The notes: generated from the letters alone by a model not told the origin. Positions 5,101 through 29,100 are shown, counted from the stretch's first letter. The stretch: DNA of 64,000 nt from Ophelia neglecta (GCA_965285935.1 OZ260665.1:46004001-46068000); one strand, 5' to 3'. Numbers and translations: made by a program.

Positions 5101-8100
5101 GAGATATCTTTCAACAAAACTGGTAGTAAGAGTATACCAAATACCAACTACGGGACAAAATTAGTTGTAAGCAAGTCACCAGTATTCTCATCAACGTGTT
5201 GAAGCTATTTGAACTAGTACAGTCTTTTCACGGTGTTTACCTTTCAAAGGTGATTGCCATTATAATGAAATTACTTGTTTGTGGTGAAAACAAGCACCAT
5301 CACATCTCCACAAATATATTCACTCTGTATATTATGGCAATTTTTGATTGACTGGAGTAACAAGTAATTTCAAAATAAAAACTTCAAAACACCATATGCC
5401 TTAGGGGCATAGTTGGTATTAGCCCTCCACAGCTAATAACCAAGGCCCCTTCAAAAGCTACACTACAGTATTTTCCAATTAAAATCTCTTTCTGTGAGTA
5501 TATTCTCTCCACATTCCCCAGTGAATAAACTAAAATGAATCCGGTCAAATATTTATGTTTTAAACTCTTCAAAGTGTTCTTCTGTAACAGAAGACGGTTT
5601 CAGGTTTTTGTAAGTATGGCTGCTTAGTTAACCTGGAAGTTTTTATCACACGGCAGGCTACTCTCCTTCATTTGAAGTACTCGGACACAAAAATCCTCAA
5701 CTTGCAGGAAATTGAGAATGCTCATATTGATGATCAATTTTGTATGTGACAATGTCCAATTGTGAAACTTGTTGTGTAGTCTGAAACCTTGAAACACTAA
5801 GAAAAACTAAGCATAACATGTATTTAAAATGCTAAACAAGGGGTTATGATTGATTAAAAAAAAGCTAAACAAGGGGTTATAATTGATCACTAATTGACTG
5901 ATTTTGGATGTTTACGCCATAAGCATACATAATTATTGCTTTTTACTGGAGGTGGAGAAAGTCTTTTTGTGGTATTTTCAGCCAGCTTTGAACTCATGGA
6001 GGCTATTACGCCACCAGTCTCTTGCTCCTATTCTACTGCTAAAGAGATTTTATTTGAAAACCGGTGTAGTGCTTTCTTTTTAAAATTCCTAATTACAATA
6101 CATCCAGACCTACACTCAGTGTAGTTCTGATTGTGTGGGAGAGTGATAGACCAAAGTATGAATATCCCAACTTGAAACTAAAATCCAATTTTCATTTTTT
6201 ACTCAACTCCGGCATCAGTCAGCTTTTCATGCTCCACCACTCACAGTGGAAGAATATAGAACAGAATATAAATATATATATATCTAAATTTGTTCATATC
6301 AATCCAAATTATAACTGCAATTCGATTGGATTGTGGTTTCAAGATCAGATTTTTTTTGTCAGTTTTGTTGAATATTTTTACATACACAATTGTTTTCTGC
6401 TGGCTAACTGTAAGATGGGACATTCATTCATTTGGTATTGTGCACTAGGCTTGGTAAGAATTTTCCCCCAATTTAGCTTGAATATATGAGCATTATTAGA
6501 ATGCTATGGCATGTGCAAGTTCTGAACTGTCATTTCTATGGGACTATTTAAAATAATAATAGTTCACCAATGGGTTTACCTTTAGGCAACACTGCAAATA
6601 TGAAAAATTTATATTGGTTAATTACTTGATCATGTACAAAACATTTAACCAAAATAAGAATATCTTCAATAAAAGTAGACTGCAAAGCAATCGTAACCCC
6701 TCAGCCATAGTCCATATTGTTACAGTAACTCAGCAATACATTTGATATTCCCACTTCCCACCACTACATGTAAGCCACATAAAGGTTTTGGAAATGCAGT
6801 TTTCCAATAATCCTTAAGAAGAGTTTACTATGAAATTCAACATTATGACTGTATTTATCCTACATTTCTAGTAAGATTTTCTAGTAATTCTCAGAACATT
6901 TATAGTCTTATTGCAAAGTGCAGCAACAAGAAGGCATTTGATATACACAATTATGTCATTTTGTCATTGAAGATCAAGATCAGCTTTAAGATTGCTAGTA
7001 ACTTCTTTGCACATTTGATTTCTTATTAGTATTCAATCAGTTGGACTGAGGTGAAAGGTTACAGGGGAAAATAATAGCACAGCATAAAAGTGAATGGCAT
7101 GGTATGTGCATACGGTGTCATAAACATTTTGTGTGGCTGCAACTTGTAGTTGGTGAGTGACAAAGGGAACAAGATTATGCCCGCCCACAAGCCTGCTGCC
7201 GAGGCAATGACAATATCCCTTCAGTCTGGGGAAAAACACTTGACCCGAAGGCTTTCAGTTAGGACACGATAAAATCTCTTCTTTTTAGTGCAGATACCAA
7301 CCAAAGTGTGATTACAATAAACAAATCAATATCTTTACACATAGGTAGCACTGGATAGAGAGACTAAAGGCAAATCAGACCAATTAAACCAACAGGGCAT
7401 TTTCTTTGCCTGCTTTAAAGTGTTTAAATCCTTCTTTTACTGCTTAATAAAACTAATAGCTATTTTGTTATTATTTATACTCTGGCAAATGCATGGGTCA
7501 AATGAACAAAAGTAATTGGCATTCTTCAGGGATTAGGACATGATAATAAACATCCTCCTCATTTACTGTTCAGTTTATAGCGAAGGAAGCAGTATGAAAT
7601 TTACTTTGCACAATAACTCAATTATTCAAATGGCCCATGCTTGGCAGCTGATATCCGATATCATTAATAACAACCAGTTATTTGCATGGGATGTGTTATA
7701 ACATTAGTCCCAGCAAGAGAGGGGATATAAGATGATATGATAAAAACAAATCAAAGACATGCTTACCGACAGTATCACCACTAACCAAGCCAGTACCAGG
7801 TGGGCCAGGAGGACCCTGGGGACCAGTAAATCCTGTGGATCCAAAGGGGCCAGGTACGCCAGTAGCTCCACTTGGGCCACCTGGACCCGTCGATCCTGTT
7901 GCCCCTGTTCTTCCTGTTGGGCCAGATGCGCCTGTGGCTCCTGTTTCACCAGTAGGACCTGTGCTTCCAGTGGCTCCAGTTCTTCCTAGAGGACCAGTGG
8001 CTCCTGTAGCTCCTGTTCGTCCTGTGGGACCAGTGACTCCAGTTGATCCGGTCGCCCCTGTTCTTCCTGTAGGTCCTGATGCACCAGTCGATCCGGTGCG

Positions 8101-26100: not shown

Positions 26101-29100
26101 CTCCTGTAGGACCCGTGGGACCAGTAGTTCCTGTAGCACCTGTTGGGCCAGTTGGACCAGTAGCCCCAGTTCCTCCAGTGGGTCCTGAATCTCCTGATGC
26201 TCCTGTTGCACCGTCTCTCCCTGGAGGGCCAGAGGCCCCTGTGCTCCCTGGAGTTCCAGGTAGTCCATCTCTACCACTTGAACCAGTTGCTCCAGCTGAG
26301 CCAGTGAAGCCTGTTGAGCCTGGCCTTCCATCAGCTCCTGATGAGCCAGTAGCTCCATCCTGTCCTGTTGCACCAGTTGTTCCAGGGAGACCTCCAGCAC
26401 CAGTGGCACCAGTGGCACCAAGCTGGCCTGTAGCACCAATCGCTCCTGTTGGACCACTTGGTCCTGTAGATCCAGTGCTTCCATCTGTACCAGTTTGTCC
26501 AGGTTGTCCTGAGAAGATATTAAAGTAGATACATTAGTTCAGATACCAGGGCAGCTATACTGTATGCCTTACAATCTATGTTTATTTGAAAAAAATTATA
26601 TAATATCAAGTATCTGTGGCCTGCTTAAAAACTAGTTGAACAAGTCTGATATAATGTTATGTGTGTTGTCATCATTGAATATTAAAATAGACCATTAATA
26701 CAGTCAAAATCTTCTTAACATGTTATTTATAACCAAATTTGATACAATCATCCCAGTAAATTTAGGAAAAAAAGAATGAATTGCAAACACCAAAAATTAG
26801 AATGCAAAAGGTCATTGGAATATTTTAAATCTGATTGATGTTATTTAATCAATACTTATAGCTAAGAAAAACAATACAATTATGAAGGTTTGCATGCAGA
26901 CATAAAATGTGTGTACATCCTTCACATTGTTTTCAATTTAAAAAAACATTAGTTTTCAACCACAAACTTTACACAAAAGTTACATACCAGATGCACCAGT
27001 CTGTCCCTGGGGTCCAGTGCTTCCAGTTCCTCCAGTGGGACCACTGGGACCAGTGGAACCTGAGGACCCTGTAGGTCCTGTAGGACCAGAGGCTCCTGTG
27101 CCGCCTGTCTGGCCAGATGGACCTGTGGCGCCAGTGCCACCCGTGGGACCAGAATCACCAGTTGCACCAGTAGCACCAATTGAGCCAGGGCCTGAGTCTC
27201 CTGGTGGGCCGGCTGGACCAATAGGTCCAGTGGCACCAGTGGAGCCTAGTGGGCCAGGAGGGCCAGCGGGTCCAGTCCCTCCAAGGCCTCCTGGTTGTCC
27301 AGTACTTCCATCTGCTCCGGAGTCTCCCTTTGGACCTGTTGAACCAGTGCCTCCTGTAGGACCTGATGGACCAGTAGATCCAGTCCCTCCTGTAGGACCA
27401 CTTGGGCCAGCTACACCTGTTCCTCCAGTTTGACCTTGTGGCCCTGTTGCACCAGTTCCTCCTGTTGGACCAGGTGGACCCTCTGATCCAGGTCCAGTGG
27501 TTCCTTCTCCAGGTGGACCTTGAGGTCCGATAGGGCCTGTAGCACCAGCAGGCCCAGGCAGTCCAGATGACCCAGTTGCTCCTGGTGAGCCATCATTTCC
27601 CGGTTCTCCTGGACTTCCAGAGGCTCCAGTTCTACCCTCAGGACCAGTTGTACCAGTGGCACCGGTGGGGCCAGCAGGACCTGTTGAGCCAGTAACTCCA
27701 GAGGGGCCAGTAGGACCAGTTGCCCCAGATCCTCCTGTTCTTCCTACATCGCCAGTTGCACCTGATGCTCCAGTTACTCCAGATGGACCAGTGGCTCCAG
27801 TTGCACCAGAACCTCCAGGACCTACACCAGTAGCACTTCCCGCTGGGCCAGGGGGACCAACAGGACCAGTGGGTCCTTCTGGTCCAGTGGGACCGGTTGG
27901 ACCTAAACCACCTGATGGGCCAGTAGGACCAGTGGCTCCAATAGAGCCTGGGGGGCCACTTGGGCCTGGATTGCCATCTGAGCCTGGGGGTCCTGCAGCG
28001 CCTGTATCACCACGCCCTCCTGTAGCTCCAGTGGCTCCAGGGGTCCCAACACCTCCTCCTGTGCCACCTCCTGGGGTACCAGGGGGCCCTCGGGCTCCTG
28101 GAAATAAAATTGGTAAAGTTAATCTGTTTATTTAGACAATGCAACTACTCTTAATACTTGATTGAAGAAATTAAAAGAGTTATACTGTAGGAACTGAACA
28201 TAAGATACTTTGAGGGCCATTGAAGGATGACTCATGGAAATCATGTGGACTTACTCAACTAGCAGGACAGCTTAGCTAGAGATGTGGTTTTAAATAGAAC
28301 GTTTACTGACCAGTGGCCCCTGTGGCTCCATTATTTCCATCCCTGCCAGGGGGTCCAGGAGGGCCTGTTGCACCCGTGTCTCCAGGGACACCTATTAACA
28401 TAAACAGTCATGTATTTAGTTACTTCAGTCTGTCTTTAGCACTACAGTTCAACAAAACTATAACAAGTTTTCCTTCATTAAACATCGCCTCAAATTTTTG
28501 ATTTTTTCATTCAAGCACTTTCTTAACAAATATGTTTTAAAATCACCAAACAGTCTTTGTCAATTACACTGTACAAAATCTAGTCAGAAAAGTGTTAAAT
28601 CAACTTGTGTGATACCTGGATTACAAATGAATAATTGAAACACACAATGAATATTAGTTTAAACAATTATTTAAGTATTCATAAAGTTAAGTTCTCATCT
28701 TGGTTAAATTTAAGGATGTCTTCGATCTGTAGAATGTTTGGGAAGTGATCTCTAAATTTCTGACAAATTAATATTCAAGTTTAACTCACTTTAAGTCATA
28801 TTCCTTGTATATTCAAATGATGAAAAGAATTTTTTCCATAACGAACTTTGACTTAGCTATACAGGGATATATTTAGATCCTATAACCTAAAAACATGTCC
28901 AAATCTAAGCTTAGCATGTTGAAGAAACATTATCTTCTGCCAGAGCAATGGTTGAGGCAAATTTTAAGAAATTTATAAATTTGTCAACTTTTTCTTAAAG
29001 TTATTGATTTTGAATGCCTGAAATTCACGTTTGACATACAAATTAGACTTGTCAATGTTGGTCTGGTTTAAATTGGTTGTGTATCGTAAAGTCCATCAGT

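What the first reader, a model, noticed from the sequence alone, without database searches (positions are those of the whole stretch)
7767..28391. Gly-X-Thr chemistry and predicted ~1.5 um length match the giant annelid/vestimentiferan cuticle collagens
Seen: the Y position is overwhelmingly Thr ([21 protein letters not shown]). Pro is mostly in X and rare in Y outside the ends, so few 4-hydroxyproline sites exist. Established (from memory, verify): Riftia pachyptila cuticle collagen is ~1.5 um long with a terminal globule, Hyp-poor and Thr-rich, and is stabilised by O-galactosylated Thr in Y; Bacillus BclA uses glycosylated GPT repeats convergently. Inference: this may be the gene type behind such cuticle collagens. 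If so, they are made as membrane-anchored EGF-containing precursors, and roughly a thousand Thr per chain could be O-glycosylated. The source organism cannot be identified from this window.
Basis: partly seen in the sequence, partly recalled or inferred. Interest (0 to 1): 0.88.

Follow-up and report, generated by a model that had tools for sequence, protein, structure and literature searches.

The report
Giant membrane-anchored Gly-X-Thr collagen gene
This is one intact 57-kb animal gene for a 1.5-micrometre collagen rod that has threonine where ordinary collagen has hydroxyproline; it carries a globular head and a membrane anchor, and it fits the sugar-stabilised cuticle collagen purified from deep-sea tubeworms, whose gene I could not find described.

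Summary
On the minus strand, 20 exons (28391-7767) encode 5,207 residues in 1,727 Gly-X-Y triplets, 1,601 of them uninterrupted. Y is Thr in 68.3% and Pro in 3.0%; X is Pro in 24.3%. The predicted helix is 1.49 um.

The gene is much larger than the finding, running from about 58382 to 1703. It encodes a signal peptide, a ~180-residue beta-sandwich head with no Pfam match, the helix, four EGF-like modules, a juxtamembrane coiled coil, a transmembrane helix, and a conserved cytoplasmic tail ending T-K-L.

An intron-less 17.6-kb contig from another organism encodes the same architecture in one 5,729-residue reading frame. It has 1,728 triplets with Y = Thr in 84.7%, so helix length and Y-Thr are conserved while X-position residues differ freely. 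This validates the exon joins, including collagen to EGF to anchor.

The match to the Riftia-type Thr-rich 1.5-um cuticle collagen is good in length, chemistry and presence of terminal globules. Cuticle expression, Thr glycosylation and shedding could not be tested, and no RNA runs exist.

The same genome also holds a 2.5-um Pro-type giant collagen with a homologous anchor exon. The scan had noted related membrane-anchored collagen families elsewhere in this genome, but not this locus.

The parts
58319..58382 (-). First coding exon: ATG at 58382, signal peptide [21 protein letters not shown], phase-1 donor AAG|GTAAGC. An acceptor (tttcag) sits 4 nt before the ATG, so at least one non-coding 5' exon lies further upstream and was not located.
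   Evidence: Signal-peptide scan and sequence. It matches the position and type of the homologue's MKSLVLGSIVVLGVLANWAWAQ. Inferred, not shown by RNA.
53250..53276 (-). Candidate 27-nt phase 1-1 mini-exon ([10 protein letters not shown]) between the signal peptide and the head; optional.
   Evidence: Acceptor cag and donor CAG|gtatgc read. The frame is kept with or without it. The homologue has about 11 residues at this place. Unverified.
52729..53033 (-). Head-domain exon 1 ([39 protein letters not shown]...), phase 1 in and phase 0 out.
   Evidence: tblastn of the homologue's N-terminus: 50% identity, E 1e-29. Splice sites read.
36656..36872 (-). Head-domain exon 2 ([38 protein letters not shown]...SVAVEINP), phase 0 in and phase 1 out. 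It joins 28391 to give INP-S-VPGDTG.
   Evidence: tblastn: 55% identity, E 3e-24. Splice sites read. The junction matches the homologue's IDP-T-VPGATG.
28311..28391 (-). Collagen exon 1 (9 triplets, contains GPPGPP).
26988..28097 (-). Collagen exon 2 (370 aa). It is the only exon with short breaks in Gly-X-Y (7); Y-Pro is 14%.
24880..26508 (-). Collagen exon 3 (181 triplets).
23854..24762 (-). Collagen exon 4 (101 triplets).
22946..23386 (-). Collagen exon 5 (49 triplets).
22306..22737 (-). Collagen exon 6 (48 triplets).
21429..21833 (-). Collagen exon 7 (45 triplets).
20218..20802 (-). Collagen exon 8 (65 triplets).
19433..19981 (-). Collagen exon 9 (61 triplets).
19104..19319 (-). Collagen exon 10 (24 triplets).
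18367..18933 (-). Collagen exon 11 (63 triplets).
17746..18231 (-). Collagen exon 12 (54 triplets).
17289..17630 (-). Collagen exon 13 (38 triplets).
16897..17085 (-). Collagen exon 14 (21 triplets).
15768..16613 (-). Collagen exon 15 (94 triplets).
14845..15636 (-). Collagen exon 16 (88 triplets).
12569..14737 (-). Collagen exon 17, the longest (241 triplets).
11077..12318 (-). Collagen exon 18 (138 triplets; part of the Arg/Asp-richer C-terminal third).
9269..10933 (-). Collagen exon 19 (185 triplets).
7767..8732 (-). Collagen exon 20 (105 triplets). It ends ...[19 protein letters not shown] with phase-1 donor TCG|GTAAGC.
4236..4379 (-). Six-Cys EGF-like module 1 ([48 protein letters not shown]), phase 1-1.
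   Evidence: Sequence. It is collinear with the homologue mRNAs.
3662..3784 (-). EGF-like module 2 ([40 protein letters not shown]), phase 1-1.
   Evidence: Pfam FXa_inhibition E 1.8e-11 and cEGF E 2.9e-6. Sequence; collinearity.
2886..3053 (-). EGF-like module 3 (…[42 protein letters not shown]), phase 1-1.
   Evidence: Sequence. Collinear with the homologue. No Pfam hit at E <= 1.
2552..2647 (-). Calcium-binding EGF module 4 ([29 protein letters not shown]), phase 1-1.
   Evidence: Pfam EGF_CA E 2e-7. Sequence; collinearity.
1703..2112 (-). Last exon: juxtamembrane heptad helix ([19 protein letters not shown]), transmembrane helix ([23 protein letters not shown]), stop-transfer RRWR, Ser/acidic cytoplasmic tail ending VTKL, and the stop codon at 1705-1703.
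   Evidence: Sequence. 68 relatives at E <= 1e-3. Trimer model ipSAE 0.59 against a best control of 0.01.

Best explanation
The finding is the helical part of one gene of about 56.7 kb with at least 29 coding exons on the minus strand, from 58382 to 1703. The predicted product has about 5,715-5,724 residues and is a type I membrane protein. Its parts, in order, are: a signal peptide; a ~180-residue beta-sandwich head; a ~5,200-residue Gly-X-Thr triple-helix domain of 1.49 um; four EGF-like modules; a short heptad helix that runs straight into the transmembrane helix; and a conserved cytoplasmic tail ending T-K-L.

I read it as the gene for the Thr-rich, Hyp-poor, ~1.5-um cuticle collagen known biochemically from the vestimentiferan Riftia.

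Proposed mechanism; everything in it is inferred except the architecture. Three chains are brought into register at the membrane by the juxtamembrane coiled coil, the transmembrane bundle and the EGF stalk. The C-terminal GPPGPP clamp nucleates the helix, which then zips from the C-end to the N-end. The ~1,180 Y-position Thr per chain are O-glycosylated and take over the stabilising role of 4-hydroxyproline. The rod is displayed on the apical membrane of epidermal cells and either stays tethered there or is released into the cuticle by an unidentified protease. The head may mediate end-to-rod contacts.
For: 1. Gene model. All 19 introns inside the helix and all five after it are phase 1, and those inside the helix split a Gly codon as G|GT. 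No coding exon contains a stop.

2. Homologue. ENA contig NODE_4_length_17652 has no introns and holds one 5,729-aa reading frame with the same order of parts. Its helix has 5,206 aa and 1,728 triplets against 5,197-5,207 aa and 1,727 triplets here. Its Y is Thr in 84.7%. Every non-collagen exon of the window maps collinearly onto it.

3. Two more intron-less contigs join collagen, four EGF-like modules and the membrane anchor in one frame.

4. Pfam finds FXa_inhibition/cEGF and EGF_CA in the downstream exons.

5. The anchor and tail exon has 68 relatives, many ending [ST]-x-L.

6. Three copies of residues 1-66 of the last exon model as a parallel three-helix bundle with heptad contacts at residues 2-48. 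The ipSAE was 0.59 (runs 0.53-0.60), the best of 3 controls 0.01, the partner pLDDT 81-82, and the runs agreed in 100% of contacts. In the tool's calibration 21 of 30 solved homo-pairs reached the mark and 0 of 23 single chains did; the calibration used two copies and microbes, so the counts hold only roughly.

7. Composition and length are given.

8. Literature. Annelid cuticle collagens have very long helices and globular domains, and Riftia's is stabilised by glycosylated Thr (PMC11766948). Ac-(Gly-Pro-Thr)10-NH2 becomes triple-helical only when the Thr are galactosylated (PMC11923368).
Against: There is no expression data. None of the runs that hold the locus is RNA, and the three runs laid on it are DNA because their contigs contain the introns.

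Glycosylation, trimer formation and shedding are untested. No furin-type site lies between the helix and the membrane.

The conserved cytoplasmic tail suggests that the anchored form itself is functional, which fits a simple 'precursor' poorly.

The Riftia figures (1.5 um, one terminal globule) are from my memory of Gaill et al. 1991/1995 and Mann et al. 1996. The papers are not held, so no peptide could be aligned.

The same genome has a 2.5-um Pro-type giant collagen, which fits the classical annelid cuticle collagen better. This gene might therefore be a minor or non-cuticular component in this species.
Confidence: 0.62

Rival explanations
1. The protein is the same, but it works while still tethered to the membrane. 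It would be a 1.5-um, heavily O-glycosylated rod standing on the apical membrane or microvilli of epidermal cells. It would act as a collagen-built analogue of a membrane mucin or as a cuticle-to-cell tether, and would not be the extractable fibre collagen of the cuticle.
For: The transmembrane helix and cytoplasmic tail are conserved in 68 relatives, with a recurrent C-terminal [ST]-x-L motif. There is no furin-type site between the helix and the membrane. The helix has no Cys and only 3 Lys, so there are few obvious cross-linking residues.
Against: The helix length and Thr chemistry fit the extracted Riftia cuticle collagen (from memory, and PMC11766948). A paralogous family in this genome reportedly has a furin hinge exon (earlier finding s1-734121), which shows that release is used in the family.
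Confidence: 0.2
2. It is a Thr-type giant collagen of some other matrix, such as gut lining, chaetal follicles, tube-secreting glands or a basement layer. The resemblance to the Riftia cuticle collagen would then be only a family resemblance.
For: The genome has several other Thr-in-Y collagen loci (C8:17.4, 19.9 and 55.5 Mb) and a 2.5-um Pro-type collagen that fits the classical cuticle collagen. There is no expression evidence of any kind.
Against: This is the only giant Thr-type collagen gene found in the genome. Its helix length is held to within about 0.2% in another organism and equals the length I recall for the Riftia cuticle molecule.
Confidence: 0.14
3. It is not a real animal gene: an assembly artefact, a decayed repeat array, or contaminating bacterial or phage collagen-like DNA.
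For: The longest exon hits only prokaryotic GXT collagen-like proteins in the word-indexed protein search. Short-read contigs break inside the repeats.
Against: There are 28 spliceosomal introns with consistent phases. The gene has EGF modules and a transmembrane exon. All exons are open. The repeat units have diverged. Contigs from three DNA runs agree almost letter for letter. A full-length homologue of equal length exists in another organism.
Confidence: 0.02

Closest known systems
Riftia pachyptila (vestimentiferan) cuticle collagen, known as a purified protein (Gaill et al. 1991, 1995; Mann et al. 1996; cited in PMC11766948 and PMC11923368)
   Same: Both have a very long, thread-like helix (about 1.5 um by my recollection, 1.49 um predicted here), Thr dominating the Y position, very few Y-position Pro that could become 4-Hyp, and non-collagenous globular ends.
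   Different: Only peptide fragments of the Riftia protein were published, and I could not read them. Nothing in what I could read mentions EGF modules, a membrane anchor or an N-terminal head. The source species here is unnamed. Glycosylation and cuticle location are untested.
Giant Pro/Hyp-type annelid collagens (8,859 aa in Alvinella, similar in Paralvinella and Eisenia; PMC12403961), and the 8,748-aa (2.50-um) paralogue at C1:93.05-93.09 Mb of this genome
   Same: Both are giant and almost uninterrupted helices. The C1 paralogue ends in a homologous transmembrane exon (34% identity, E 1e-5). A Pro/Ala-type transcript from another organism carries the same four-EGF plus TM module (L020).
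   Different: In the C1 paralogue Y is Ala/Pro/Arg/Ser with Thr only 4%, X-Pro is 43%, and the helix is 2.5 um rather than 1.5 um. The C1 gene has no room for EGF exons between the helix and the TM exon. It has no related N-terminal head.
Vertebrate and invertebrate membrane collagens (XIII/XXIII/XXV 'MACITs', PMC4678570; collagen XVII)
   Same: All are collagen triple helices tethered to the plasma membrane, with a coiled coil next to the membrane as the likely trimerisation device.
   Different: Those are type II proteins with the TM at the N-terminus and no signal peptide. Their helices are short and interrupted and would fold from N to C. This one has a signal peptide and a C-terminal TM (type I), a helix of about 5,200 residues, and the membrane-proximal end at the C-terminus.
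Bacterial and phage GXT collagen-like proteins (BclA type)
   Same: Both have Gly-X-Thr repeats. In BclA the Thr are glycosylated (reference list of PMC11923368). These proteins are the best-scoring matches for the longest exon.
   Different: The likeness is compositional only. Those are intron-less prokaryotic genes of up to about 1,260 aa in the hit list, with other terminal domains. This gene has 28 introns, EGF modules and a eukaryotic signal peptide and TM layout.
Lingula anatina uncharacterized protein LOC106170605 (P0197, 2,861 aa)
   Same: It is a type I membrane protein with a collagen domain in which Thr is the commonest Y residue (41.7%). EGF/cbEGF modules and a C-terminal TM follow the collagen.
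   Different: It has only 309 triplets and large non-collagen domains of another kind (Pfam PF17517). It is 26% identical over the EGF-TM region, so it is a distant relative and not an orthologue.

Membership tests
Riftia-type Thr-rich cuticle collagen | Triple helix about 1.5 um long | tested here: met
   The helix domain has 5,197-5,207 residues, which at 0.286 nm per residue gives 1.49 um. The published figure is from memory and was not verified here.
Riftia-type Thr-rich cuticle collagen | Thr dominates the Y position and there are few Y-Pro/4-Hyp sites | tested here: met
   Y is Thr in 68.3% and Pro in 3.0%. The homologue has 84.7% and 2.3%.
Riftia-type Thr-rich cuticle collagen | Y-position Thr carries O-linked galactose | not testable with these tools
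   Needs glycoproteomics of the native protein.
Riftia-type Thr-rich cuticle collagen | Globular domain at one end of the rod | tested here: inconclusive
   Globular modules are encoded at both ends: the head and the four EGF modules. Which of them remains on the mature molecule is unknown.
Riftia-type Thr-rich cuticle collagen | Made by epidermis and located in the cuticle | not testable with these tools
   No RNA run holds the locus.
Riftia-type Thr-rich cuticle collagen | Agreement with the published peptide sequences | not tested
   Mann et al. 1996 is not held in the library.
Giant Pro/Hyp-type annelid cuticle collagens (PMC12403961) | 7,700-8,900 residues with Pro 33-40% in X and 21-33% in Y | tested here: not met
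   This protein has about 5,720 residues, with X-Pro 24.3% and Y-Pro 3.0%. The C1 paralogue does meet the feature.
Type II membrane collagens (MACITs, collagen XVII) | N-terminal cytosolic domain and signal-anchor TM; interrupted helices | tested here: not met
   It has a cleavable-type signal peptide at the N-terminus and the TM 80 residues from the C-terminus. It has 1,601 uninterrupted triplets.
Fibrillar collagens | C-propeptide (COLFI/NC1) domain, about 338 triplets, exons beginning with an intact Gly codon | tested here: not met
   The C-terminal exons give only EGF-type Pfam hits. There are 1,727 triplets. The introns are phase 1 and fall inside the Gly codon.
Nematode cuticle collagens | Short chains of about 300 aa with interrupted Gly-X-Y blocks flanked by conserved Cys | tested here: not met
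   The 5,207-residue helix has no Cys.
Prokaryotic BclA-like GXT collagens | Intron-less prokaryotic gene with a C-terminal BclA/TNF-like or phage-fibre domain | tested here: not met
   It has 28 introns and EGF and TM modules. The similarity is confined to the GXT repeats.

The most novel reading that the evidence does not exclude
The rod may be a conserved molecular ruler. It would be a type I membrane-anchored, sugar-coated collagen of fixed length: 1,727 triplets here and 1,728 in a distant homologue, even though X-position residues were replaced freely. It would stand on epidermal microvilli and set the geometry of the annelid cuticle. Its uncharacterised N-terminal beta-sandwich head, which weakly resembles lectins and carbohydrate-binding modules, would dock onto the galactosylated helices of neighbouring molecules. 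The giant annelid cuticle collagens, both the 1.5-um Thr type and the 2.5-um Pro type, would then form one previously undescribed class of C-terminally anchored collagens that fold from a membrane-embedded trimeric coiled coil.
Probability: 0.2. Interest if true: 0.85.

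Novelty: new variant of a known kind. Interest (0 to 1): 0.72.

Why it matters
The Thr-rich, galactose-stabilised cuticle collagen of vent tubeworms has been the textbook example of a collagen that does without hydroxyproline since the 1990s. In everything I could search, its gene and full primary structure are undescribed. 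A 2025 genome paper states that siboglinid gene predictions contain no very long collagen (PMC12403961).

This locus and its full-length homologue supply a complete candidate sequence. They also show features that protein chemistry could not see:
- a signal peptide and a novel head domain;
- four EGF modules;
- a C-terminal membrane anchor with a conserved cytoplasmic tail;
- a likely membrane-proximal trimerisation coil;
- a helix length conserved almost to the triplet.

This makes several old questions directly testable. How does a 5,200-residue helix fold in register? Which enzyme glycosylates about 3,500 Thr per trimer? How is the orthogonal annelid cuticle laid down at the cell surface?

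It also offers a natural, Hyp-independent design for recombinant collagen materials.

Tried and rejected
1. The search for homologous proteins with the 723-aa exon returned only prokaryotic GXT collagen-like proteins, which reflects composition and not ancestry.

2. The look-up of sequencing runs found no RNA run. Read laying therefore served only as an assembly check. The many 'joints' it lists come from one contig cross-matching the repeats and are not splicing.

3. tblastx of the upstream 36 kb against the C1 and C8:55.5-Mb paralogous loci found no shared N-terminal exon, only a shared repeat element. A first signal-peptide scan limited to 28.4-45 kb found nothing convincing. The N-terminus was found only after a full-length homologue was recovered.

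4. The head domain has no Pfam match. Foldseek against the PDB gave nothing at E <= 0.001. VIA-align gave a best Z of 7.7 (rmsd 2.8 A, 104 aligned; allantoicase), then 7.2 for an F-type lectin, followed by PHR domains and carbohydrate-binding modules. The tool says that level is typical of models without a clear match. The ESM Atlas gave only unnamed clusters. The model itself is mediocre, with pLDDT 59 and pTM 0.62. I therefore call the head only a beta-sandwich and do not call it a lectin.

5. The head's paralogues on C7 are not followed by collagen within 30-40 kb, so head plus collagen is not a wider family in this genome.

6. Mann et al. 1996 could not be read. A search for the run and assembly accessions in papers found nothing. 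The listing of cluster members gave no organism names.

Full report
**Observation.**
The window is AT-rich animal DNA at 32-40% GC, with a 20-kb block of 43-55% GC at 8-28 kb. On the minus strand this block holds long open stretches of Gly-X-Y. Reading the borders shows 20 exons. Each follows an AG and precedes a GT, and every intron is phase 1, cutting a glycine codon as G|GT. The exons add up to 5,207 residues and 1,727 triplets without a stop.

Y is Thr 68.3%, Ser 7.0%, Gln 5.9%, Asp 5.3% and Pro 3.0%. X is Pro 24.3%, Ser 19.0% and Ala 17.1%. The commonest triplets are [21 protein letters not shown] and GRT. Y-Pro is concentrated at the N-terminal fifth and in a final GPPGPP. The only breaks in the repeat are 7 short ones in exon 2 and LVS seven residues before the end, which leaves 1,601 unbroken triplets. 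The helix has no Cys, 3 Lys and 6 Tyr. At 0.286 nm per residue it measures 1.49 um.

The DNA repeats are short and 63-85% alike. Contigs from three DNA runs of one sample reproduce 12678-18400 with 0-6 differences. I therefore see no sign of assembly inflation.

**The C-terminal half of the gene.**
Downstream on the same strand lie five more exons, all entered and left in phase 1:
- Three six-Cys EGF-like modules. The second hits Pfam FXa_inhibition at E 1.8e-11 and cEGF at E 2.9e-6.
- A calcium-binding EGF module (EGF_CA, E 2e-7).
- A last exon with a heptad helix, a 23-residue transmembrane helix, RRWR, and an 80-residue Ser/acidic tail ending VTKL.

A profile-free search of 1.84 billion proteins with this last exon found 68 relatives. 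Several come from intron-less contigs:
- L019 (Logan SRR19075495) has 583 aa in one frame: GXT collagen, four EGF-like modules, TM, and a tail ending TQL.
- L020 (SRR3624128) has 1,992 aa: a Pro/Ala-type collagen followed by the same module.
- ENA ERZ3792509 NODE_4_length_17652 has one frame of 5,729 aa.

The window's five exons map collinearly onto these contiguous sequences. The collagen and the EGF/TM exons are therefore one gene.

**The N-terminal half.**
The full-length homologue begins with a signal peptide and a ~190-residue domain before the helix. tblastn places that domain in the window at 53033-52729 (50% identity, E 1e-29) and at 36872-36656 (55% identity, E 3e-24). The second exon's phase-1 donor joins collagen exon 1 to give INP-S-VPGDTG, matching IDP-T-VPGATG in the homologue.

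Upstream, an exon at 58382-58319 encodes [21 protein letters not shown] and ends in a phase-1 GTAAGC donor. A 27-nt phase 1-1 mini-exon at 53276-53250 may lie between them. The ATG exon itself follows an acceptor, so a 5' UTR exon remains unfound. By arithmetic on exon lengths the product has 5,724 residues with the mini-exon and 5,715 without, against 5,729 in the homologue. I did not build or submit a joined sequence. All searches used single exons by reference.

**Conservation.**
The homologue's helix has 5,206 residues and 1,728 triplets, with Y = Thr 84.7% and Y = Pro 2.3%. Its few interruptions lie in the N-terminal 360 residues of the helix, as they do here. Its X positions are very different: Asp is 23% there, while the window gene has Ser, Ala, Arg and Phe at X. 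The head is about 50-55% identical and the anchor exon 47%. Length and Y-Thr are therefore held fixed while the rest drifts. That is what one expects if the Thr is chemically required and the rod length matters.

**What the parts suggest.**
The head has no Pfam family. An AlphaFold model is a beta-sandwich of modest confidence, with pLDDT 59 and pTM 0.62. Its best structural neighbours are allantoicase, F-type lectins, PHR domains and carbohydrate-binding modules at Z 6-7.7. The tool says that level is background for models without a clear match, and the ESM Atlas gave only unnamed clusters. I call it an uncharacterised beta-sandwich; a sugar-binding role is speculation.

Three copies of the first 66 residues of the last exon model as a parallel three-helix bundle. 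Contacts recur every 3-4 residues from residue 2 to 48, so they span the juxtamembrane helix and the TM. The ipSAE was 0.59, the best of three controls 0.01, the pLDDT 81-82, and the runs agreed fully. In the tool's calibration 21 of 30 solved homo-pairs reached the mark and 0 of 23 single chains did; that calibration used two copies and microbial proteins. This supports, but does not show, a membrane-proximal trimerisation device. Together with the adjacent GPPGPP it would let the helix nucleate at the C-end, as in fibrillar collagens, but from within the membrane.

The tail is conserved across the family, with motifs such as SDLSD and N-x-GF and a frequent C-terminal [ST]-x-L. That argues the anchored state is itself functional. 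No furin-type site separates the helix from the membrane.

**Comparison with what is known.**
Reviews I could read say the following:
- (Gly-Pro-Thr)10 is helical only when galactosylated (PMC11923368).
- Gaill et al. 1991 saw cuticle molecules up to 2.4 um long (PMC2443231).

The figure of 1.5 um for Riftia and the single terminal globule are from my memory. The primary papers are not held.

The 2025 Alvinella genome paper reports 7.7-8.9-kaa Pro-rich collagens in alvinellids and an earthworm. It states that siboglinid predictions have none as long (PMC12403961). It does not mention a Thr type, EGF modules or an anchor.

In this genome the anchor exon has one paralogue at C1:93.09 Mb. It terminates a collagen of 2,916 triplets (8,748 aa, 2.50 um) with X-Pro 43% and Y-Pro 22%, head-to-head with a second giant collagen. 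That pair fits the classical 2.5-um annelid cuticle collagen. The genome therefore encodes both a 2.5-um Pro type and a 1.5-um Thr type, with related anchors.

Shorter collagens followed by EGF exons lie at C8:55.5 Mb, and other Thr-in-Y collagens at C8:17.4 and 19.9 Mb. Nothing else in the genome is both giant and Thr-type.

A distant relative annotated only as 'uncharacterized protein' exists in the brachiopod Lingula.

The gene is not any of the following:
- A type II membrane collagen: it has the opposite topology.
- A fibrillar collagen: it has no C-propeptide and its introns are phase 1.
- A nematode cuticle collagen.
- A bacterial BclA-type protein: that similarity is compositional only.

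**Verdict.**
The sequence-level claims are solid, at about 0.95 for the gene model and architecture. Identifying the gene with the Riftia-type cuticle collagen is the best reading, at about 0.6. It rests on length, chemistry and terminal globules, not on expression, glycan or peptide data.

The main rivals are that the rod functions while tethered, or that it serves another matrix. As far as I could search, the architecture (signal peptide, head, 1.5-um GXT helix, four EGF modules, coiled coil, TM, tail) is undescribed. I rate it a new variant of a known kind.

Noticed in passing
G000:C1:93054701-93090220 (+), loci L003-L007; partner on the minus strand from 93010445 downwards (L010-L012): A giant Pro-type collagen of 2,916 triplets (8,748 aa, 2.50 um; X-Pro 43%, Y = Ala/Pro/Arg/Ser). 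It ends in a TM exon homologous to this gene's and has no room for EGF exons. It lies head-to-head with a second giant collagen, of which at least 1,387 triplets were fetched. It matches the 8-9-kaa annelid collagens of PMC12403961 and the classical 2.5-um cuticle collagen.
   Followed up: partly
L020 (Logan SRR3624128 contig, 5,993 nt): An intron-less contig from another organism has a 1,992-aa frame in which a Pro/Ala-type collagen ends in the same four-EGF, coiled-coil and TM module. The anchor module is therefore shared by Thr-type and Pro-type collagens.
   Followed up: partly
G000:C7:63517696-63527753 (+): A tandem array of about six copies of the two-exon head domain lies within 10 kb. 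Single copies lie at C7:71.209 and 71.330 Mb (minus strand), with no collagen within 30-40 kb downstream. The head is therefore a reusable module of unknown function.
   Followed up: partly
G000:C8:46105746-46105988 (+) and 46115198-46115410 (+), 38-47 kb beyond the window's end: Two exons are similar to the second half of the head domain (35-48% identity) and lie on the opposite strand, so they are divergent from this gene. No Thr-type collagen hit was seen there.
   Followed up: no
window 40270-40641 (-): A 124-aa open frame with 11 Cys and no Pfam hit lies inside the 16-kb intron between the two head exons. It could be an unrelated exon, a transposon remnant or chance.
   Followed up: no
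window 34108-34300 and G000:C1:93032045-93032240: An interspersed repeat of about 190 nt is shared between the intron of this gene and the intergenic region of the C1 collagen pair. It is about 60-72% identical in translation in several frames, so it is non-coding.
   Followed up: no
window 1706-1945 (-) and proteins P0121-P0160: The cytoplasmic tail is conserved across the family: RRWR after the TM, Ser-rich SDLSD-like and N-x-GF motifs, and a frequent C-terminal T/S-x-L (TKL, TRL, TQL, SRL, IRL). This looks like a class I PDZ-ligand type ending.
   Followed up: partly
window 9270-14738 (-) compared with 14846-24763 (-): The rod is polar in composition. The N-terminal fifth carries the Y-Pro and the interruptions. 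The middle is almost charge-free GXT, with D+E and R+K each at or below about 3%. The C-terminal third has 4-7% each of Asp/Glu and Arg, mostly as GRD triplets.
   Followed up: no
P0197 (NCBI LOC106170605, Lingula anatina): A brachiopod type I membrane protein of 2,861 aa has 309 collagen triplets (Y = Thr 41.7%), EGF/cbEGF modules and a C-terminal TM, and is annotated only as uncharacterized. Thr-in-Y collagen combined with EGF modules and a C-terminal anchor is therefore not confined to one phylum.
   Followed up: partly
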